Below, piece after piece: positions 51,981-64,000 of a stretch of DNA of 64,000 nt. Every line of letters begins with the position of its first letter. The stretch's first letter is position 1. The stretch is from Haplodiscus bocki (lineage: Eukaryota). The DNA is taken from contig OZ296657.1 in assembly GCA_965655095.1 (NCBI GenBank), positions 61,690,001 through 61,754,000 on the forward strand. The letters are read 5' to 3'. The position numbers and the translations under genes are program-made. Below the pieces are notes generated by a model that was not told the origin of the DNA, did not search any database, and worked only from the letters and a program-made list of their open reading frames with translations.

Positions 51981-52796
51981 TGTCGGCGCGGGAATAAACG
52001 CTTTGATGTCCATCTCTGACGGATTAGGACCGTCCATTTTCTGTCGAAAGATGGAAAAGGCGCGTCCTATGATGGAAGAGATGGATGGAAAAGTTGTTTA
52101 TTTCCCGCCAGAGTCGGCATTTTTAACTTTGATGTACTAGTGAACAAAGTACTTTTCCCTATTTGTACCTTGACTGGGCGGGTAAACAATTATGTTTCCA
52201 GCCAGGAAAAGGTATAAATAGGAGAAATGAAAGTACAGAGGACACAACTTTTCATTTATTGTAAAGTACTGATGATAATATTCCAGTATAGCATTTCCCT
52301 TCGTTGTTGATAAAACTGTTGAAAAGACAGAAATTGATTTCTCCTTCTGAAAAAAAATCAATTATTACTGACTGATCGTTATTTTTCCCGCAAGCGATGA
52401 CAAATCGAAACAAGAGGAAATTGGCAGCATTAAAAAAAGAAAACTGTGAAGAACATCCTAGGAGCAACAAGGCACAAAACTCAAGCGCTCCTAGATCGCA
52501 GGAGGACTATGTAACTTAAATTTCTGAGGAAATTGAGGGAAGGGTCACGAAAAGGCTGTCAAAGGAGTTCAGTAGAACAGAAAACCGCATTCTAGGTGCA
52601 CTAGGGCGACTCAATGATTTTCTTATGAACCCGCTACTACCGGGACACTCCGGAACCACTCCGGAGCCACCCCGGAACTCATTAAACACAAGCCAGGGAA
52701 CGAACGAGGACGACTCCCAGAATGATCCTCGTCCCGAAGCGGGCCTCTTCCACGGTCAGATGACACAAAACTCTGGCCCAGAAGATGGCCACAACA
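51981..52796 (+). repeat. 5' LTR (816 bp, TG...CA)
   Basis: TGTCGGCGCGGG...CACAACA, delimited by homology with the 49324-50143 copy and immediately followed by TGG. Confidence 0.8.
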
Positions 52797-54015
52797 TGGT
52801 GACAGGAGCTACAGAACAAATTGGTAATTGCCACAATATGACTGGAGTTCACGAGGAAGTCACATACTGCCCCCCTAGTACATCTTCAGGGAAGCAGAAG
52901 AAAAACCGTTCCACCAGTCAACCACAATTCCGCAGTGAAAACGCACCTGCGACGATCGAAGCAGACCAAATTTTGTTGGCCCTTCAGCAGTTGGCAAATA
53001 ATAACAATTCTGCGAACTTTCACAATAACATCAACAGAATCTCCAAACTCCCAAAGTCATTAGCCACATCGATGCCCACGTTTGACGGAAAAACTGAGAA
53101 ATTTGAGCTCTTTGAAGACCTTTTTCAGACGAGTCTCAATGTTCATAACCAGTTGACTGAAGATGACAGAATCAACTATTTCCATTCTCTCGTGAAGGAA
53201 GATGCCCTACAAACCTTTAAAAATATTAATGGCCCAACCCGAGAGATACTGGAAGAAATTCTAGCAGTTTTCCGAACGAAGTATGTGAAACCTCAATTGA
53301 TGGCAACAGCAAAACATACATTCCAGAAACTCGTCTTTAATCCAGCAAATCAAAAGTTAGTAATTTTCTTGACGAACTTCAAAAACTGGCCAAAGACGCA
53401 TTTGGAATAGCTGCCCATGCCATCATCGAACAGTTCATATACGCCAAAATGCCACCACACGTGAAAAAAACAATAATCCAGGCCCATCTAGAGAATGGCA
53501 CGTACGAACAAATTGTTACACACCTGGAACGGGAATTAGAGTTGAATGGTTTGGAAGCCCCTGACGAGCTACCGATAAACAATGTGAGCCAACAACCCAC
53601 AAACACTAACGCCGACAGACCCAAACCAACGTACCATCAGTGTAAAAAGCCAGGAAATTACAGAAATCAGTGTCGCTTGTTGAAAAAACAGCAAGAACAA
53701 ACTGAAAATAATCAAAACAATCCAGGAAACAAAAACAGTGACGCCAATACCTCTAACCCGAACAGCAATGTCAGCAACAATAATAACAACAAAAACAGTA
53801 ATGGAGCTGAAAGAAAGCCAAAAACTATTTACCCACCCTGTGAGACATGTGGAAAAACAAACCACTCCACAGAGAAATTTTACTTTGGAGCCAATGCAGC
53901 CAATCGACCGCCTCCCTGTCATAGAAGACCGGAAAGACAAAATCAGATATCAGAGAGAGCCAATCAAAGTGATAATAATGAAGCTCCTCAAGCTGCAGCC
54001 CAAAATTTAAACTAA
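52397..54015 (+). pseudogene. Gypsy gag
   Basis: ATG at 52397 (MTNRNKRKLAA), in frame with the 52625 ORF apart from one TAA at ~52517. Contains MPTFDGKTEKFELFEDLF and two degenerate CCHC knuckles (YHQCKKPGNYRNQC, CETCGKTNHSTEKF). Frameshift at ~53365. Confidence 0.85.
52797..52808 (+). promoter_or_regulatory. Primer-binding site candidate TGGTGACAGGAG
   Basis: TGG directly after the LTR-terminal CA. It is 11/12 identical to TGGTGTCAGGAG, the complement of a common tRNA-Leu 3' end. Confidence 0.6.
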
Positions 54016-54061
54016 CAATGCCACGTCTTCACTCCGGAGCTGCGGTTGACAGACCGGAGAC
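54006..54061 (+). promoter_or_regulatory. -1 ribosomal frameshift signal between gag and pol
   Basis: T TTA AAC at 54006-54012 just before the gag TAA. Pol is in the -1 frame, with a downstream stem ctccgg (54032-37) / ccggag (54054-59). Confidence 0.75.
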
Positions 54062-57000
54062 AACTAATTTAAAACTTCCACCAATTCCAGAGGTTGTCTG
54101 GCAGCAAACCCAGGAGACTCATGTACCTATTATTTATCAAACTTTCAAAAATGAAACTCATAAAAATACCCTCATGCCTGAATCTAAACACAGAAGTGAT
54201 GTAGAATCACAAACGTCGCACATAAAAGAAACCTCATCCCAAGCATCCGTATCCCGTACGGAACCACTCCTAGGAAACCAAACTTGGAGCGCGCTAGTAC
54301 CGAGCCTCAATGACTCCAAGAAACTCGGCTCAGAAATTCAAAGAAATGACATTGACATGATGACCTGGGACAGTGGAGATGACAAAATATCCCCGCCTGC
54401 AATAGCAATTTCCCAAATTGAAGAACGACTATTGAGGGATGATAGTACCAATGAACTTTACATGCCACTATCCTCCACAATTGTCCTAAAACGAAAGAAA
54501 GAAATGTTGTATGTCCCTCTGGATTTTGACAATGGCTTAACAATAGACGCCCTTGTTGACTCGGGAGCCTATGTGAGTGCAATAGCTCAAAAAGAGCTTG
54601 ACAGAATCAAACAACAATCTCCGTCTAATATCCTAAAAATTGATGATCCTCCTGACTTTCAAATTCAAGTAGCAAATGGCCAGTTAGAGGAACCAACAGC
54701 AACAACCACACTCAAATTTGACATCGGGGATCACATTTTTGCAGAACATTTCGTTGTGATGAAAAATCTGACAGGACCTTTTATAGGATTGCACTTCATG
54801 AGACATAACAGCGTGGTCATCGATACCACTCATGGTCTCATCCACTTCCCACATTTGACAATGCAAGTCAAAAGTGCATTGAGTCAAACAAGTGTTAAAC
54901 CTCAAGTTGTTGTTATCCACGATAATATAACAATACCACAAATGACGACAAAAACAATCACAGCATTTGTTGACCACGTATCAGAATGGAATACAGCAGG
55001 GACTGTAACGCCAGTGGAAAAATTCAGAAACCGCGAGTCTCATAATATCCCATTCAATGTCAACAAAAACTGACAAGAAGATAGCAGTCAGAGTCACCAA
55101 CACCACGGAATCACCCTATACAATCAACAAGAACACACAAATTGTCGAATTCTCCGTAGTCACTCCGGAGCAATCCAAGTTTATCAAACCGGTAGACATG
55201 GCAGTCCTTAGTATGATTCCTGAAGGTGACCCAGACCTGATTACATATCTGACTGAGCTACTCAGAACAAACAAAGCAGATCAGCAAACCAACACCTTTT
55301 GGTTTCCGACACCCGAAAATCCTGGCAACACAGAGGAGCACACCCGAATTCAAACGCGAATCCTAAAGGAGCTGCGTGAACTGCAATTGAAAGAAAAACT
55401 CAACCCGAAAAATCACACTGAATCAAGAACGGAATTCCTAAAGCGCTTTGATTGGACGGACACACTGCTCACCGAAACTGAGAAACAAGCAGTTGAAGAC
55501 TTCCTAGTCGAACATCATGACATATTTGCTAGACACAGAATGGACATTGGGATGAACACAGAATTCAAGGTGAGACTCACACCAAAGGATGACAAAGCTG
55601 TTTACAGCCAAAGCGTACCAATGCCGATCCACCTGAAAGAAGATTTAATTGTTGAGCTCACTCTTATGCACAAATACGGGATCATCACAGTGTTACCATT
55701 CTCAAAATACGCAAGTCCCATATTTGCACAGAGGAAACCCAACGGAAAATTACGTCTCCTTGTGGATCTCAGGAAAATCAACACCCTGATTGCAGATGAT
55801 TATACCAACAATAATCACCCAGTCAGCACTTTGTCAGATGCAGTACAACACCTGGCAGGGAAATCCCTATTCTGCAAGCTTGACTGCTCTCAGGCTTATC
55901 ATTGCTTGCAGATGGCGGACCAACGTTCGGTGGAAATGCTTGCATTCAATTTTGCTAGCAGAACCTTTGCCTACAAAAGACTTGCACAGGGTCTCAGCAG
56001 ATCTGTGTCTGCTTTTTCGAGCTGCATGCGCGAGTACTTGGTCCCAGTCTTAAAAGTTGACCAATGTACTCAATATGTGGATGATATTGGAATCGCAGCC
56101 AATAATGCTACAGACCTCACCCGGAACATTCGGGCAGTCTTCCAGTGCATTCGCAATGCAGGATTGAAACTGACAATGGAAAAGTGCCATTTTGGAGTCA
56201 GGCAAGTTGAATTTCTCGGAAGAACCATTTCATCCGAGGGAGCATCGCCACAAGCTCACAAGTTCCAAAATTTTTCGAACCAATTGAGACTCCCCAAATC
56301 GAAAAAGGCTTTGCAGTGGTATCTGGGCTTCGTAAATTATTACAGAAATTATATTCCCAGAATGGCTGAAAAATTCAACCCATTCTACAAACTCTTGAAA
56401 GCAGAAGTCCCAATCAACGTCACATCAGAATTGAAAGAAACTTTTGATTGAGTAAATAAAGCATTGAGTGATGTTTGCGAATTAGCATTGAAGCAACCCG
56501 TTCCTGGAAAGCAGCTTGTCCTAATGACGGACGCAAGCTTCATAAGCGCAGGCTATGCTCTCATGATTGAAGATAAGCCAGATCAAAAAATCCAATCAAA
56601 GCGCAAGACTTACGCACCTGTCATGTTTGGATCAAAAATTTTTTTGCCTGCACAACTGAAAATGTCGATTTACTCAAAACAATTTTTGGCAATTTACATG
56701 GCATTCCTCGATTTTGAACACATCTTGTGGGAAACAACGAAACCAACAATCATTCTGACGGACAACAAATCCGTCACACGATTGTTCCAGACCAAAGCAA
56801 TTCCACCATCTTTGTGGAACGCACGTGATTATGTGCAGCAGTTAAACTTCAAATTAGCGCATATCGCTGGTTCAGTGAACACAGCAGCTGATTTCTTTTC
56901 ACGATTACAGTTAAAAGTCTTGGAAAGGATCCGTCTCAAAATCAGGGAAGATGTACAAACAACACCCATTGAAGTCACAACATCCTCTTCAGATGTTGCA

Positions 57001-58903
57001 GATGAAGAACAGTTTTTCTTCGCGCACACAAAAGATCAAGGTGAAAGTGAAGAACAGATCTTACAGAGAAAAAAACAACCTCGAGAGAAAGCAGCAGAAT
57101 GGGTAGTCAACCAGGAACCATCCTCAATGAAGCCAAGTATAAAAGAATTCACAAAGATCGAAGGAAACACTATGGCGTATTCCCTTCATGGAATTAAAGC
57201 AATCGCGAGAATACGAGTAGAGCAAGATGCCGATCTAGTATTGAAGAACTTGAAACTTAAAATACGTGGCCAACCAAACGATGATGTGCTATTGACAACA
57301 GACAGACGATTTAAGCATTACAAAGCAAATGAAGATCGCATTATCCTCAAGGATGGACTCCTATTCCGGAAATACTACGGAGACACTGGTAACGTTAAAT
57401 ACTACCAAATTCTCATACCGAAGCAGTTAGTTAACGAAGTACTCCGGAGTCTCCACGGAGAATTTGGGAAACATCCTGGAATTACCAAAACGATAATTGC
57501 CTACAGAGAAAAATAATATTACCCGAAAAAGGCTCAACTAATCAGGGAATGGGTCATGTCATGTGAGCAATGCATTAGAGAATTACGGATTAATCCCCAT
57601 TTCACCCCCCCCCGTGCAAAACCCAAATGAGCACATTACTGCGCCCGAGGACCCCAAGCAAATTGATTTAATACCGGGATTACCGCCATCTGGTGGCTAT
57701 GAGAACATTGTGACAGCCATGGATGTATTTTCCCGCTATTTGGTTGCTTACCCGACATCAAATCAAGACGCCACAGCAATCGCCATACTGATAATTAACA
57801 TCATGACGAAGCACGTCTACTTACCAACAACACTTATCTCAGATAAAGGTACAGCCTTTACGTCACATGTAATTAAAGAAGTGGCCGTCGTCCTTGGTAT
57901 TACTCTAAAGCACGCCACTACAAAGCACGTGCAAACAATTGGGCTACTTGAACGATCACACGCGTCAATCAAACAGTCATTAAAGATCGAAACAGGCGAG
58001 CGGAGATGATTGCGGCACAAATACATCAGCATTGCGGTCCGTAATTACAACACCTCCTATCACTCGAGTATTGGATCCGAACCGAGCAGAGTGTTTCACG
58101 GCCGCATCCCTTATAATATACTTGATTTAAAATTGGGTATTCGTCCAAAAAAAATTTCCCCGCCAGATTCAGAAATCGCACAAGACGTCCTTGAACAGAC
58201 AGAGGCGATTTTCCAAGACGTCCGGAAAAATTCTCTGCAAGCTTATATCAAATACAAAGCGTATTATGATAAAAAAACCAATGCTTTAAAACTGAAACAA
58301 TCTGATTATGTTTACATTCTGCAGCCAAAAGGGGATCACCAGGGAAGCAAAATTCCCTTCACAGACTTTCGTTGGATCGGGCCATATATTATTGACAAAG
58401 TATTACCCAACAATAAATATGTGGTACGAAAAAATGTCACCAATAAAACGCAAATCCTGCACAGTATGAGGCTACGTCAATTCACACCCCGCCAGCCAAT
58501 ACCAGACACACCAGTCACATCACGCGAATGGTAACCAGACCTGGAAGTTACCAATACACATGATGATTTATACGCCAGAGCATGGGAGTGTGAGTACGAC
58601 AAGCCAATGTTTGACAGCGATCGCGAGAACATGGTCATACCTGATCCACCCGAAGTCACAGTACGACCTGAAGAACAAGCCGATGAAACAAGGAGTATTC
58701 CAGGAACCATACAAGAGGACTCCTCAGAGATTCTTCCCCACACAGATGAAATAGATGACAGAACGGATACGGATCACTACATGCAGCCTGATGCGGATAA
58801 TAGTGTAGAGCAAAATGACCCTAGGCCTACCAACCCCCGCAGCTCAAAATATAATCTACGCCATAACCCAAGGCCAAATTGCAATGACGACTACAGATAT
58901 TAA
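54006..58903 (+). pseudogene. Gypsy pol (protease, RT, RNase H, integrase) with several stops and frameshifts
   Basis: LVDSGA; LRLLVDLRKIN, KLDCSQAY, YVDD; MTDAS, TDNKS, NTAADFFSR; HGEFGKHPG..CEQC, QIDL, ISDKG, GLLERSH; WIGPY. Lesions at ~55030, 56449, 57514, ~57605, 58007 and 58532. Confidence 0.95.
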
Positions 58904-59348
58904 ATCGTAAGTCTACCTTGGTGTGCATCCGGAACAACCACGGATAAAACATGTGGATTGTGGGAAAGTGCTACGGAGCGGTTACGGAACACTTACGTAC
59001 CCAATCACAAAACCTCTAGTACAACGTCTGTAACAACACAGAATTACAAGAAATTTAGTCCTAGTAGTTTTCCAAATTGCAGAGATGCAAACCCAACGTT
59101 CCAGAAACACCCACCTAGTGTACCCTAGTATGTCCTCCGGAGAACTTCCGGAGACATTCCTGAGTTTTCCTAAAATGGTGGCTACGGATACAATACGGGG
59201 TACATACAAATTATTCCTAATACTTTGAGGCTACACCCTGGCGACATACTCAACTACTACTCAACTCTGTGAAATGACAACGGGCTATAGACAGTTAACT
59301 ATATACTCTAAATACTAAATATAATTCCAAATGCAATGATATGTAAAG

Positions 59349-62300
59349 TTATCGGGGACTTGACTGAGAAACTGGTATAGCACGACGACTAAGACCACTA
59401 CGGCGCGAGGAAACAGTTTTATCGTCATCCCGCAGAGCAATTGCAAAACTGGGATCATCGAAATAAACTCCCCGTCCCTTGGGCAGCACTACCGACTCAT
59501 CGTCGAATTCAAAACGGCGCTTGACAGCAGTTTTGGTGGGCGTCTCACTCTTCTTCTGTTTCCCCTTCCCAGGGCTTTTGACAGCGCAACTCGTACTGGG
59601 CACTTGTGTGGCAGAAACAGACTGGGGCAAATAATCCACATGACCGACTTCAACAACATTCGAAATGCGAACAGCTTGCTGACCCGAAGACTCTCCAACA
59701 GCAGAAGACGCGACGCTACCTACACCAAACCATCGCTCAGAAGTGTCTCGAGCATCCTTCCGGCGAACCAAAACAACATCATACGCCCTTTTTAAGTCAG
59801 AGACGACAGCAGCATATCCCTCAGCAGATATAACAGCCCACGAGTCATACACAGAGTCTTCACAAACACTGCCTGCGACGTTTACAGCACACAGCAACAT
59901 TGAGATACCACTGTCCGAGAAGAAATCCCGCTGAGTGAAGAGAGGGTCCCGTACAAAACTTTGTACACAGCAGATAGCAGAATCGATTGAGCGGTGATCA
60001 ATTGTGACACGGTCAAGATTTAGCTGGAATCGGGGTATCTCCTCTGCAGGACCACGTTGAAATATTGCTGTCAATTGGAAGACCTAAAACTTACAAAAAC
60101 TTTTAATGTTTGACCACAGCAATGGAGCCAATTTGCAAGCCCACCAGACTTACTCGGTAAAGGTGCCGGCGACTCCGAAAACCACTCGGCTGAGTCAAGC
60201 AACTGAGGACATTACTAATATCAGAGTGCTTTCTACTGGCACGACATTCAAGTTGGCGCTGGTCATTCACAAAGGATTGAAACTCAGCTTTGCAAGCTTC
60301 AACCGTCGACCTTTTTTCCCACCCACACTCAACCAAGCCGTCCAGGAGCTGTCCAAAGAGAAAGAAGGCGGAATGGTCATCGCCACCGATTATTATCTCT
60401 GGGCAAAAGCAGCTGACGCCCTGACCCAGCCTCGAACGAGCGGCGACAGTAGATAAAACGGTGCTGGTGAAGTCCTCGAAAAAACGACGGGCATTGCTTC
60501 TAAACTCCTTCTTCAAATACTGGCTTATCATTTTCTCCAGCGCTGCATGCACGCGTGTCCCGACAAGAAAATGCTGATCCTCGATGGCTGTGAAGGATGA
60601 ATGGTTTAGGAGCGTGTAACTCTCCCACTTCTCGACAACAGACAAAGATCCACTGGCCTTTATTTTCTGCAGCAAACAATACACGAAGTTCGATAGTTCA
60701 CCATATGCATGGTAGCCGTAATCGTTCCGTGGTGGCTGCTGTGTTGCGAAGTTGTTGTTGTCTGAAACAGAAGAATACATCTGATGACTAAATGTGGAAA
60801 CCAGGATACCACTAGGAGCACCACACGTGGACGCCTAGAAATCCCTAAACATGGGGAAATGAGGATACCACTAGGAGTCCTACATGTGGACTCCCAGAAA
60901 TCCCGAAACATTTGGCAATGAGGATACCACCAGGAACGCGACACGTTGACTCCTAGAATTCCTATAACCAAAACCCGTGTGGGAATGGCAAACACTACAC
61001 AATTGCGACAGTGGATGAAAATACCAACACAATTCAAGGATGAGATGGAACAAGCGGAACTTCATTCTCCCCAGCTGGTCAATGTAGAAGGATCCATCTA
61101 TCCCTTTTTTCTAAACATGAAAACGGAAAAAAGCATTGGCAGTCATGCCAAAACAGAAACTAAAAGGGGAAAACCATACCACAAGACTATCGCCGCTGTC
61201 TTTTTTGCCAGCCTCTTTGAGGTATGAGACAATGAGCGGCCAAACCCCAATGTTGCTCACAACATCCACCAGCCCAGGCAGGGAAAGATCACCTGTCTCA
61301 ATCGCCCTTCGCAGGGATTGTCTCGACTGCATCCAATCACGATGCTCAGCACCTTTGAGTCTGGTCACGATGAACTCAGTCATCGAAAACGGATCGAGCG
61401 TCCCGAACACAGTGGAAGCTGTCTTTTGTAAGCAGCGTTTGAGCAACCTGACATCAAAAAGTGGATAATCCAACACTCCGCGCATGCACCCGCTTCCCAC
61501 ATACTCCTTGTAGCTCTCAGCAAGAGTGTGTGACCACCCAGAAATTCCCACTAAAGACGCCCCACTGCCATCTGCACACAAAATTTGCCTAAGAATGACG
61601 AGTTCGCTGCTAGCATCGCCATGATAGCGATCGATCACCCCCACAGCCACACGGTAAAAAGTGTCCCGACGCCATGTCCTCACGAACACCCAAGTACGGG
61701 AACCACGGTCCTCAAATTCCAGCCCATACTGCTTGTGCGCTTTCACCCACTCGATGACCCGGTCCAAAACTCGGGGAAACATTCCATTCAGAATGATTGA
61801 CTGAAACAAATAAATGAGCAAATCTGTGACAAAGAGCCTACACATATGTTCCGGGGGACACACGGAACTGACCAAAACTTCATTGCGCGACCAGGTAACG
61901 CTGACATTGACCCGACTGGCTGTCAAGACGAACCGCTCCCACAGACGCTCAACCAACTCGTAACTTCCAACCAGCTGGAGTACATCGATGAGGGACGAAA
62001 CCTTGGCGAGCACAGGAAGTTGAGGGTCAGTGTTTCCGGAAGCATCCGGAATCAAGTCCTCACGGTACGGGTATTCTCTGTCCCGAACAACTAAGGGAGC
62101 CCGCAGATTTTTTCACGCTGTCTCTGCAGCTCACCCTCTGTCAAATGCTTGCCATCGAACCCAAGGACACGCCACCCAGGAGTCTCAAGTCGGAGCCGCT
62201 GATCCCTCGCAAAGTGCCGCATCCCTTGAAAATGGCGCAAGACCTCCGAACTGCCATGGGTGAGCACCGACAAGTCTTTTCGGCACAGCCGGCAGTAGAA

Positions 62301-63715
62301 ATCACTCAGTTTTGTGGAAGCGTCAGTGGGACCAGTCACAAAAAACCGAGCCAGCTCGCTGGTGGCATAGCTCTTCTTCATGTTGAAGGTACGTTTTGAG
62401 CGTACCCTCCGTCGAGGCTGGCTTGTGTCAGTCTCCTCCCCACTGGTGTCCGTTGTGTCAGTCGCACGTCGCTGTTGCTGTGACACAGAAGGCCCCAGGT
62501 TCAGCTTGTCCAACACCTCATTAAGCTCTGCAAACAAAATAACAGATGGTGAAACCACAGAATTACGGAGTCATACGGAACAGTTCCGGAGTACTAACTG
62601 GTCATTAATGAACCCAGGAGCTGATTCTTCTCCTCCTCCACCACGGAGCGGCAGAGAGACACCAGCTGATGCCCTGTGGCCCAAATCACTGAATATGAAG
62701 GATTTCCACTGTACTGATCTAAAACAGGAAAATATGGGTTACAAACATGGAGCAAACGAGGAGTAATACTAGAAGACTACTCATTTGAAACAAGGTATAC
62801 CCTCATCAAACGCCTTCTCTAGCAGCTGGCGACTCCTACTCTTGCTTCAGTCGGCCGCAAGGAGACAATGCTGGGCCCCCCAGCGAGCGGTACTAGTCGT
62901 TTAGTAACAACAGCTCGTCTCCTGCGCACCACACTCTCGCTCTCCACGCCAGTGGACACCTCTCCGGCTCGATCCCCTCCTGTCTTTTCTTCTGTGCCTA
63001 TAATGCAGAAAACAACCATGAAAACACGCTGGAAACACTACCATGATAATTAAGCCAGAGCAATGCTAACTTTCAGCAACAGCCGCCAGCGGAGCTCTCC
63101 GGGAAGCTCTCTGGGGAAAGTCCTCTTCAGAAGTTGCCCCGCTATCCTCAAACTCACTGCCCGAAGCAGACTGCTCTCCACTACCACGAGCTGACTTTCT
63201 GGCAGGCTCTCCGCAGGAATCGTACACTAAAACACAACCCGATGGCGAAGTCAACTTCTACTGAAATTGTGCGCACATGACAACTAACTTAACCGATCGA
63301 ACAACTGGCCAGTGTGACATCCTAATAAAAAGTTAATGGATATTGAGAAGTTTGAAAACTAACAAATCGGTAGTCCGGCAGTATCAAGTGCATTTTCTGT
63401 CTGCGAAATTAGACCAGCTCTCCCGATTCCCTCCTCGAAGGTGACTCCTTCTGACTCACACCCACCAACAATTGACAGAGCTCCACCCATAGAGATGGTT
63501 TCTGACTCATTGTCAGCTTCTGTGCCCCTGTCTACTCGTCTCCTCACATCTGCACTACTTCCAACAGCCTCACGCACAATGGGGGGATCAGGGGGGAACT
63601 GATCAAAAGGGGACACAACAGCATCCGGGGCTGCTCCGGAACTCTCCACATGACAACTACCCTCGCCTCTCACAACGACTCGACTCTTCTTCGTTTTCTT
63701 TTTTTCATCAACCAT
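59349..63715 (-). pseudogene. Antisense multi-exon gene (~9 exons, ~1,170 codons) encoding a zinc-finger protein, slightly decayed
   Basis: Predicted exons 63715-63364, 63226-63071, 62997-62801, 62718-62599, 62527-61873, 61800-61180, 61110-61025, 60761-60154 and 60083-59349, with GT-AG introns mostly 69-82 nt. Zinc finger FYCRLCRKDLSVLTHGSSEVLRHFQGMRH. Lesions in exons 3, 5 and 7. Confidence 0.75.
60803..60970. repeat. 3x 58-bp tandem repeat within a predicted intron of the antisense gene
   Basis: Unit ggataccactaggagcaccacacgtggacgcctagaaatccctaaacatggggaaatga repeated three times with substitutions. Confidence 0.85.
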
Positions 63716-64000
63716 GATGAATGGGGTGGCATACTTTCAACTATTACATGGTGGACTTATAATTTTATTCATTAAATAGCTCGATTATTTAATTTCTAAA
63801 TTGACCGATTTGTCTGCCAGCAATGATGTCAGCATGATATTTCAAGGATACATTGAGGAGTGAAACTCAAAATTTCTTCATTCCAAAATCTCATCTTCAT
63901 TTTGTTTACCAATCATCAACTTCAGTTATACCGCCAATTAAGTGACTACAGTACTTCCACTGAAACCGCGGGAACTTCAAAGCGTCTCCCGCCTGACGGC

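What the first reader, a model, noticed from the sequence alone, without database searches (positions are those of the whole stretch)
51981..64000. Gypsy retrotransposon apparently carrying a convergent, intron-rich antisense gene
Seen: ~450 bp after the pol stop, where a PPT and 3' LTR would be expected, the scattered minus-strand ORFs join through eight GT-AG introns (137, 73, 82, 71, 72, 69, 263 and 70 nt) into one ~1,170-codon gene. Most junctions are phase-compatible (AES|TEE, LMT|KLNEV, EVL|SIIL, HLYR|VFQL); exons 3 and 7 carry lesions. It has a few lesions, as does pol. Established: sense-strand introns are usually lost during retrotransposition, whereas antisense introns are not spliced from the genomic RNA and can persist. 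Inference: this is a >12-kb Gypsy family with a spliced antisense cargo gene that could act as a regulator or anti-silencing factor, or supply antisense/dsRNA. I know of no described animal Gypsy with this many introns in an accessory gene.
Basis: partly seen in the sequence, partly recalled or inferred. Interest (0 to 1): 0.9.

Follow-up and report, generated by a model that had tools for sequence, protein, structure and literature searches.

The report
Retrotransposon carrying a spliced antisense gene
A common Ty3/Gypsy-type jumping gene in this animal genome carries, on the strand opposite gag-pol, a nine-exon gene for a zinc-finger protein that selection has preserved as strongly as the element's own polymerase, an arrangement known only in much simpler form from plant elements and a few retroviruses.

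Summary
The core observation holds. The minus-strand ORFs at 59349-63715 form a nine-exon, eight-intron gene of 1,177 codons at the family's modal exon lengths.

- **Location.** The gene lies inside a ~15.4-kb Ty3/Gypsy LTR retrotransposon. All 29 other full-length copies examined show the same order: pol, antisense gene, 3' LTR.
- **Selection.** Variants shared among copies give N:S 104:251 in exons 5-9, against 752:222 for private variants (ratio 0.12, p 3e-57). The pol C-terminus gives the same ratio. Introns and spacers look neutral.
- **Introns.** Four exon borders checked in two element lineages only 40-60% identical in protein, one of them clearly from another species, carry GT or AG at the same codon positions.
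- **Corrections.** The LTR is 1.8 kb (50978-52796), not 816 bp. Intron 7 is in frame at 267 nt, not 263. The family also has a third, sense-strand ORF between the antisense gene and the 3' LTR, overlapping the polypurine tract and U3.
- **This copy is dead.** gag-pol is broken, the antisense gene has two frameshifts, and the element is truncated at 64657 with no 3' LTR.
- **Not shown.** Splicing lacks RNA support, because no RNA runs were available. The protein's function is unknown, and a hAT-transposase origin is not supported here beyond a weak shape match.

This scan had already noted the same element family on other DNA of this genome.

The parts
50978..52796 (+). 5' LTR, 1,819 bp. It begins with a mutated TG (TT in this copy) and ends in CA.
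   Evidence: The LTR pair of the C1 copy (L032 5736-7450 and L033 5397-7108, 97.3% identical over 1,718 bp) maps to the window at 50980-52796.
51576..51758 (+). Three 61-nt tandem repeats inside the LTR, each carrying the core GGATACCACTAGTAGC.
52797..52814 (+). Primer-binding site, starting TGGTGACAGG directly after the LTR's terminal CA.
52625..58903 (+). gag-pol, broken into at least 8 ORF pieces. Pfam matches: weak DUF1759 (gag), aspartic protease, RVT_1, RT_RNaseH, Integrase_H2C2, rve, plus a C-terminal extension.
   Evidence: The C-terminal part is under purifying selection in the family.
58904..59348 (.). Convergent spacer between the pol stop and the antisense-gene stop. It presumably holds the 3' UTR of the antisense gene.
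   Evidence: No codon periodicity and a neutral N:S ratio. No canonical AATAAA was seen on the minus strand.
63364..63715 (-). Antisense gene exon 1. The ATG at 63715 is kept in 25 of 30 copies.
   Evidence: shared N:S 18:21 against private 123:19
63071..63226 (-). Exon 2.
62801..62997 (-). Exon 3. The window copy lacks one G of a G-run at 62878. The 3' border is the least certain in the model.
   Evidence: An alternative 63-nt intron (62839-62777) would fit the copies that lack the G.
62599..62718 (-). Exon 4.
61873..62527 (-). Exon 5. It holds the zinc finger CxxC-x16-H-x5-H at 62214-62294. The window copy has a 1-nt deletion near 62100.
61180..61800 (-). Exon 6, the best-conserved core (760 homologous ORF fragments in public assemblies).
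61029..61110 (-). Exon 7, a short conserved exon.
60154..60761 (-). Exon 8.
59349..60083 (-). Exon 9, including the stop codon. It ends in a lysine-rich tail.
60792..60968 (+). Three 59-nt tandem repeats inside intron 7. They share the core GGATACCACTAGGAGC with the LTR array.
63716..64000 (.). Strongly conserved head-to-head region between the antisense ATG (63715) and the sense ORF3 ATG (64101, just past the window end). It is a candidate internal or bidirectional promoter, with TATA-like TATAAG at 63760-63755 on the minus strand.
   Evidence: inference; no RNA data

Best explanation
This is a dead, 3'-truncated copy of an abundant ~15.4-kb Ty3/Gypsy-type LTR retrotransposon. The family's standard genome is 5' LTR, gag-pol, a convergent nine-exon antisense gene, a short sense ORF3 that overlaps the polypurine tract and U3, then the 3' LTR.

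Shown:
- The antisense gene belongs to the element and is not a neighbour or a nested insertion.
- It encodes a protein of about 1,177 residues with an N-terminal low-complexity region, a BED-like CCHH zinc finger, a conserved alpha/beta-plus-helical core and a basic tail.
- That protein was under purifying selection as strong as pol's while the family diversified.

Inferred mechanism:
- The gene is transcribed from an internal promoter in the conserved 385-bp head-to-head region, or from the 3' LTR in antisense.
- Its eight introns are removed only from that antisense mRNA.
- The element replicates through the complementary, sense genomic RNA. There the introns read CT...AC and are invisible to the spliceosome, so they are copied into every new insertion.
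- My preferred function is a nuclear nucleic-acid-binding accessory factor that the element needs for its own expression or integration. I put this at about 40%. The biochemical activity is unknown.
For: Linkage
- At least 30 full-length copies at 87-94% identity.
- All 29 others are collinear through the pol 3' end and reach the 3' LTR at the same distance.
- In one copy recovered end to end, the gene lies between LTRs that are 97.3% identical, with a PBS and a PPT.

Coding
- Third-position periodicity appears in the exons only, with phase changes matching each intron length.
- Stop-free phases match.
- Shared against private variants give N:S 104:251 against 752:222 in exons 5-9 (ratio 0.12, p 3e-57), and similar ratios in exons 1, 2 and 4.
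- The pol control gives 0.12. Introns, spacer and intergenic controls look neutral.

Introns
- All 30 copies keep all eight introns at near-constant length.
- In L039 and L038, whose proteins are 40-60% identical, exon ends are followed at once by GT, and exon starts are preceded by a pyrimidine tract plus AG, at the same codons.
- In 9 divergent homologues the intron-5 stretch is unconserved and varies in length between conserved flanks.

Depth of the association
- L039 is a complete related element with the same convergent layout. Its pol is 63-69% identical and its antisense gene 41-58%.
- Its nearest relatives in this genome are only 68-78% identical in DNA, so it comes from another species, and further lineages exist here.
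Against: - No RNA evidence. The only public runs that hold the sequence behave like genomic DNA contigs and show none of the predicted joints.
- None of the 30 sampled copies has an intact spliced ORF, so current activity is unproven.
- The exon 3 / intron 3 border is ambiguous.
- The protein matches no Pfam family, no PDB sequence and no Atlas cluster. The two structure models are poor (pLDDT 67 and 56). Function therefore rests on inference.
Confidence: 0.85

Rival explanations
1. The antisense block is a separate DNA transposon (for example hAT-like) or a host gene that merely sits beside or inside this one copy.
For: There is a weak BED-like zinc finger. The first beta-beta-beta-alpha unit of exon 6 gives a weak shape match to Hermes transposase residues 155-238 (Z 4.1). 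Earlier notes of this scan read the protein as hAT-like.
Against: The gene is multi-copy and always in the same place and orientation inside the element. Among the best 37 genomic matches, none was seen detached with ends of its own. A related element from another species has the same layout. An ancient capture from a transposon is still possible, but that would be the gene's origin and not its present state.
Confidence: 0.03
2. The ORFs and 'introns' are chance features of decayed non-coding DNA in a long pol-to-LTR spacer.
For: The window copy has frameshifts, and none of the 30 copies is intact.
Against: The N:S contrast has p 3e-57. Periodicity is confined to the exons. There are 760 protein-level homologues. 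Splice sites are conserved across lineages.
Confidence: 0.01
3. The gene is a transduced passenger, or acts mainly as RNA by supplying antisense or double-stranded RNA for self-regulation, so its protein is not needed by the element.
For: The gene converges on pol with only a 445-bp spacer, so the transcripts could overlap. Antisense transcripts do regulate Ty1 and retroviruses (PMC12786077, PMC7264820).
Against: Selection acts on the amino-acid sequence, as strongly as on pol. It has lasted across lineages only 40-60% identical in protein. A mere RNA source would not conserve reading frames, exon phases and a CCHH finger. An RNA role alongside the protein role is not excluded.
Confidence: 0.08

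Closest known systems
Plant Ty3/Gypsy elements with antisense additional ORFs between pol and the 3' LTR (Retand/Tat lineage, maize Grande, rice RIRE2)
   Same: They have a long pol-to-3'LTR region holding an antisense ORF that is present in most copies and across distant species. They often carry tandem-repeat arrays in that region. The proteins are thought to bind DNA and to be nuclear, and Grande's is transcribed from its own promoter (PMC11963269, PMC7264820).
   Different: Those are plant elements. In the texts I searched their antisense ORFs are described as plain ORFs; 'intron' does not occur in either paper. Most encode the Transposase_28 domain (PF04195), which is absent here. The element here is probably from an animal (not verified here), and its gene has eight introns, about 1,177 codons and an unrelated protein.
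HTLV-1 HBZ and other deltaretrovirus antisense genes
   Same: They are protein-coding genes on the minus strand of an LTR retroelement, expressed from a spliced antisense mRNA and acting as nuclear regulators (cited in PMC10974842 and PMC11963269).
   Different: HBZ has one intron, is about 200 residues long, is a bZIP protein and starts in the 3' LTR. Here there are eight introns and a zinc-finger protein, the promoter is unknown, and a sense ORF lies between the gene and the 3' LTR.
3' accessory ORFs that overlap the PPT and U3 in retroviruses (for example HIV nef; from general knowledge)
   Same: The family's sense ORF3 runs through the polypurine tract and 85 nt into the 3' LTR.
   Different: There is no sequence similarity. 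ORF3 is a Ser/Pro/acidic-rich, probably disordered protein with no transmembrane segment, so it is not env-like.
hAT transposases (Hermes, Ac)
   Same: Both have an N-terminal BED-like CCHH finger followed by a beta-beta-beta-alpha unit. The match to Hermes 155-238 is weak (Z 4.1, rmsd 3.5 over 74 residues).
   Different: Pfam finds no hAT dimerisation domain and no significant zf-BED match. There is no PDB sequence match. The position that would hold the first catalytic Asp is Glu in most homologues (by eye). The gene has no ends of its own.

Membership tests
Ty3/Gypsy (Metaviridae-type) LTR retrotransposon | Direct long terminal repeats ending TG...CA that flank the internal region | tested here: met
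   The C1 copy has a 1,715-bp LTR pair, 97.3% identical, running TGTCGC...ACAACA. In the window only the 5' LTR is present (50978-52796).
Ty3/Gypsy (Metaviridae-type) LTR retrotransposon | PBS next to the 5' LTR and polypurine tract next to the 3' LTR | tested here: met
   TGGTGACAGG follows directly after 52796. AAAG(12)AG lies directly before the 3' LTR in L033.
Ty3/Gypsy (Metaviridae-type) LTR retrotransposon | pol domain order PR-RT-RNaseH-IN | tested here: met
   Pfam finds, in this order, aspartic protease, RVT_1 (2.4e-24), RT_RNaseH, Integrase_H2C2 and rve.
Ty3/Gypsy (Metaviridae-type) LTR retrotransposon | RT groups with Ty3/Gypsy in a phylogeny | tested here: inconclusive
   No tree was built. 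The best solved relatives are a retroviral-type PR-RT-RNase H polyprotein (7kse/7ksf), then Ty3 RT and a caulimovirus polymerase.
Ty3/Gypsy (Metaviridae-type) LTR retrotransposon | 4-6 bp target-site duplication | tested here: inconclusive
   Only one complete copy could be read. It has cccat against ccgat, 4 of 5 matching.
LTR retroelements with a conserved antisense accessory ORF (Retand/Grande type) | Antisense ORF between pol and the 3' LTR in most copies and in distant lineages | tested here: met
   30 of 30 copies have it, as do the related lineages L039 and L038.
LTR retroelements with a conserved antisense accessory ORF (Retand/Grande type) | Transposase_28 (PF04195) domain in the antisense protein | tested here: not met
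   No Pfam hit in any exon at E up to 1, nor in 60 homologues at E up to 0.1.
LTR retroelements with a conserved antisense accessory ORF (Retand/Grande type) | Antisense transcript from its own promoter | not testable with these tools
   No RNA runs were available. A conserved upstream region with a TATA-like motif exists.
hAT transposase-derived protein | BED zinc finger | tested here: inconclusive
   A CxxC-x16-H-x5-H pattern is conserved in the family. Pfam zf-BED scores only E 0.2.
hAT transposase-derived protein | RNase H-like DDE core | tested here: inconclusive
   Best match is Z 4.1 to Hermes 155-238, on a model with pLDDT 67. The larger model gave nothing.
hAT transposase-derived protein | C-terminal hAT dimerisation domain (PF05699) | tested here: not met
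   No Pfam hit in exons 8 and 9 at E up to 1.

The most novel reading that the evidence does not exclude
The element is a two-strand retroelement. A conserved internal bidirectional promoter drives two genes of its own. One is a spliced antisense gene for a transposase-derived zinc-finger protein that binds the GGATACCACTAG-type arrays in the LTR and in its own intron 7. The other is a sense ORF3. Together they control the element's transcription or choice of target. An LTR retrotransposon would then have permanently recruited a DNA-transposon protein as an essential accessory factor.
Probability: 0.15. Interest if true: 0.85.

Novelty: new variant of a known kind. Interest (0 to 1): 0.72.

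Why it matters
- **Gene structure in retroelements.** Retroelements are expected to carry intron-poor genes, because they pass through spliced RNA. This family shows that a large intron-rich gene can ride in a retrotransposon indefinitely if it sits on the antisense strand. It survived family diversification and at least one species split, under selection as strong as on pol.
- **Reach of accessory genes.** Antisense accessory genes, known from plant Tat/Retand elements and deltaretroviruses, would extend to what is probably an animal, in a far more complex form.
- **A testable case.** It offers a way to ask what such accessory proteins do.
- **Annotation.** Gene predictors will call thousands of these copies as host multi-exon genes.

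Tried and rejected
**RNA evidence.** Laid on 58900-64000 they behave like collapsed genomic repeats and show none of the eight predicted joints among those listed. This says nothing for or against splicing.

**Extending past the window.** Only 1,215 bases beyond 64000 (locus L001) and four other copies could be read.

**Protein identity.**
- Pfam on all exons found nothing, and nothing on 60 homologues.
- A PDB sequence search with a profile and with the zinc-finger exon found nothing.
- Two ESM Atlas feature searches found nothing usable.
- The AlphaFold model of exon 6 (pLDDT 67) gave no significant match with Foldseek on PDB, the wide VIA search (best Z 4.8) or the Atlas shape search.
- The model of a 451-residue homologue covering the finger through exon 6 was poor (pLDDT 56) and matched only generic helices.

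**hAT reading.** It is therefore neither confirmed nor excluded.

The joined (spliced) protein was not searched or folded; exons were handled one by one by reference. Intactness of copies is reported only as counts.

**Readings rejected.**
- Single-copy host gene.
- Nested transposon private to this copy.
- Chance ORFs.
- BEL/Pao membership. The weak DUF1759 gag hit is outweighed by the RT_RNaseH and Integrase_H2C2 matches.
Full report
**1. What is in the window**

Plus strand, 52625-58903.
- The sequence carries a broken gag-pol in at least eight ORF pieces.
- Pfam finds a weak DUF1759 gag match, an aspartic protease, RVT_1 (E 2.4e-24), RT_RNaseH, Integrase_H2C2 and rve, in that order.
- The closest solved polymerases are a retroviral-type PR-RT-RNase H polyprotein, Ty3 RT and a caulimovirus polymerase.
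- This is a Ty3/Gypsy-type element.

Minus strand.
- Starting 445 bp after the pol stop, a chain of stop-free segments runs from 63715 down to 59349.

**2. The gene is part of the element**

- A search of the window's own 1.5-Gb genome with 59349-63715 returned 37 scored matches out of 2,852 first-look candidates. Thirty are full length at 87-100% identity.
- Each fetched locus carries 1.5 kb of flank. All 29 other copies remain collinear with the window through the pol 3' end (57849-59349) and for about 940 bp beyond the antisense ATG.
- All 29 then run into the same LTR at the same distance.
- For one copy on contig C1 I could read both ends. Its LTRs are 1,715-1,718 bp and 97.3% identical, and run TGTCGC...ACAACA.
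  - The 5' copy is followed by TGGTGACAGG (a PBS).
  - The 3' copy is preceded by AAAG(12)AG (a PPT).
  - The flanks read cccat and ccgat.
  - That element is 15,373 bp, and the antisense gene lies wholly inside it.
In the window the 5' LTR is 50978-52796.

**3. State of the window copy**

- It leaves the family alignment at 64657, about 85 bp before the 3' LTR should begin.
- The next 559 bp are a 95.7% direct repeat of 50252-50810, which lies just upstream of the 5' LTR.
- With broken gag-pol, two frameshifts in the antisense gene and a truncated ORF3, this copy is dead.

**4. Gene model**

| Intron | Coordinates (minus strand) | Length (nt) |
|---|---|---|
| i1 | 63363-63227 | 137 |
| i2 | 63070-62998 | 73 |
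| i3 | 62800-62719 | 82 |
| i4 | 62598-62528 | 71 |
| i5 | 61872-61801 | 72 |
| i6 | 61179-61111 | 69 |
| i8 | 60153-60084 | 70 |

- Intron 7. The family's reading phases require a length divisible by three.
- At the modal exon lengths of the 30 copies the exons sum to 3,534 nt, which is 1,177 codons plus the stop.
- The window copy lacks one G of a G-run in exon 3 (62878; 15 of the 30 copies also lack it). It also lacks one base in exon 5 near 62100, and has two in-frame 3-nt losses.
- For copies without the extra G, an alternative in-frame 63-nt intron (62839-62777) would also work. The exon 3/4 border is therefore the least certain part of the model.

**5. Is it really coding?**

I aligned the 30 copies and split variable sites into two classes. 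Shared sites have the minor allele in at least 3 copies, so the change arose while the lineage was still replicating. Private sites are singletons and mostly reflect decay after insertion.

- Shared variants pile up at third codon positions in every proposed exon, for example 21/13/62 in exon 6, 15/10/65 in exon 8 and 15/18/73 in exon 9. Private variants are flat, and introns show no such bias.
- A sliding-window map shows the periodic phase switching exactly where the intron lengths predict. It also shows exon 5 continuous in family coordinates, so the window's frame break there is private.
- A stop-codon map across copies gives the same phases.

Classifying variants as amino-acid-changing (N) or silent (S) gives:

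| Region | Shared N:S | Private N:S | Ratio |
|---|---|---|---|
| Exons 5-9 | 104:251 | 752:222 | 0.12 (Fisher p 3e-57) |
| Exon 1 | 18:21 | 123:19 | 0.13 |
| Exon 2 | 9:13 | 46:13 | 0.20 |
| Exon 4 | 6:11 | 37:10 | 0.15 |
| pol C-terminus (control) | 32:78 | 195:55 | 0.12 |

- Intron 7, the 63716-64048 region and the pol-gene spacer look neutral in all phases.
- The antisense protein has therefore been under purifying selection as strong as pol's.
- Duplications of dead copies would add neutral shared variants, so the estimate is conservative.

**6. Are the introns real?**

No RNA was available.
- The only runs holding the sequence are of unknown kind, are stored as contigs, and behave like genomic DNA. 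None of the predicted joints is among the listed ones.

The comparative evidence is strong.
- All 30 copies keep all eight introns with almost invariant lengths, and none lacks an intron.
- An exhaustive protein search with the largest exon found 760 ORF fragments in public assemblies, all unnamed.
- In nine divergent homologues (38-49% identity) the alignment is good up to ...EVL, collapses into an unconserved stretch of variable length, and resumes at ...SIIL. That is exactly intron 5. It collapses again after ...SLVV, at intron 6.
- In two fetched contigs carrying 40-60% identical versions (L039, L038), the bases right after the homologous exon ends are GTTGGT, GTAAGG and GTGAGT. The bases right before the homologous exon starts are pyrimidine-rich and end in AG. 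Intron lengths there are similar but not identical: 69 against 72 nt, and 70 against 69 nt.

**7. Depth of the association**

- L039 is a complete related element. Its gag, PR, RT, RNase H and IN are 40-69% identical to the window's (63-69% across RT, RNase H and IN).
- These lie on the strand opposite a 41-58% identical antisense gene, in the same convergent layout. The last two exons are duplicated there.
- Its closest relatives in this genome are only 68-78% identical in DNA, with 2,344 first-look candidates. It therefore comes from another species, and further diverged lineages of such elements live in this genome.

**8.

- Codon periodicity also appears at about 64100-64700.
- In other copies this is a plus-strand ORF of about 258 codons (L033 4705-5481). 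Its ATG corresponds to window position 64101.
- It is head-to-head with the antisense gene across a strongly conserved 385-bp region.
- It runs through the PPT, whose G-run encodes a glycine run, and 85 nt into the 3' LTR.
- It is under purifying selection (shared 42:70 against private 157:46, ratio 0.18).
- It is present in all 30 copies, and in L038 at 39% identity in the same relative position.
- The protein is Ser/Pro/acidic-rich, has a basic motif, no transmembrane segment and no Pfam match. It is not env-like.

**9. The antisense protein**

- It has a low-complexity acidic/Ser-rich N-terminal quarter (exons 1-4).
- A CxxC-x16-H-x5-H finger follows, conserved across copies. Pfam zf-BED matches it only at E 0.2.
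- Then comes a conserved core (exons 5-9), ending in a lysine-rich tail.
- Sequence searches found nothing: Pfam on the exons and on 60 homologues, a PDB profile, and Atlas features.
- The AlphaFold model of exon 6 (pLDDT 67) shows helix, three strands, helix, three strands, then five helices. Its best structural matches are weak.
  - SRP14 scores Z 4.8.
  - Hermes hAT transposase residues 155-238 score Z 4.1 (rmsd 3.5 over 74 residues).
  - ASKHA-fold kinases score about Z 4.
  - All are below the level at which such scores mean more than a common motif.
- A larger model was too poor to use.
- Earlier notes of this scan read the protein as a disabled hAT transposase. My tests leave that open: the finger and the first beta-beta-beta-alpha unit are compatible with it, but the hAT C-terminal domain was looked for and not found.

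**10. How it most likely works**

Shown: element membership, protein-level selection, and conservation of exon borders.

Inferred:
- An internal promoter lies in the conserved region upstream of 63715, which has TATA-like TATAAG about 40 bp before the ATG. Antisense initiation further upstream is also possible.
- The antisense pre-mRNA is spliced eight times.
- The protein enters the nucleus and acts on nucleic acid for the element's benefit.
- The introns persist because replication goes through the complementary genomic RNA.

One lead: a 16-nt core, GGATACCACTAG-N-AGC, occurs six times in the window, with zero expected by chance. It occurs only in the 61-nt array of the LTR and the 59-nt array of intron 7, always on the plus strand. 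It is modestly better conserved than the rest of intron 7. It could be a shared binding site, but this is untested.

**11. Comparison with what is known**

- Antisense additional ORFs between pol and the 3' LTR are described for plant Retand/Tat, Grande and RIRE2 elements. They often come with tandem arrays and a putative DNA-binding protein (PMC11963269, PMC7264820).
- Spliced antisense genes are known from HTLV-1 (cited in PMC10974842).
- Three full-text searches and the papers I read turned up no description of an intron-rich antisense gene in an animal LTR retrotransposon. That is not proof of absence.
- I rate this a new variant of a known kind.
- The same family was already noted, and followed up, on other stretches of this genome by this scan.

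Noticed in passing
window 64658-64000+ (L001 6810-7367) and window 50252-50810: The sequence that replaces the missing 3' end of this copy is a 95.7% direct repeat of the 559 bp lying about 170 bp upstream of the 5' LTR. This suggests a ~14.4-kb tandem or segmental duplication, or recombination between two copies of another repeat.
   Followed up: partly
window 49335-50143: An inverted fragment of the same LTR family (72-86% complementary to 51981-52785) lies upstream, so the element sits in a nest of related insertions.
   Followed up: partly
window 51576-51758 and 60792-60968: The 61-nt tandem array in the LTR and the 59-nt array in intron 7 share the core GGATACCACTAG-N-AGC (6 hits, none expected by chance), all on the plus strand. 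It may be a shared protein-binding module.
   Followed up: partly
L001 6253-6809 (window-equivalent 64101-64657); L033 4705-5481: The family has a third, sense-strand ORF (~258 codons, Ser/Pro/acidic-rich) under purifying selection. It is head-to-head with the antisense gene and overlaps the polypurine tract and the first 85 nt of the 3' LTR.
   Followed up: yes
L039 11133-13650: In a related element from another species, the last two exons of the antisense gene are present twice in tandem.
   Followed up: no
window 64014-63960 (minus strand): A perfectly conserved AAG|GTGAGT donor and TTTCAG acceptor lie 55 nt apart, upstream of the antisense ATG. They could form a 5'-UTR intron, which would place the antisense transcription start inside or beyond ORF3.
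   Followed up: no
window 52625-52796: The first gag ORF piece starts 172 nt inside the 5' LTR and reads through the PBS, as another first-stage note on this window also remarked.
   Followed up: no
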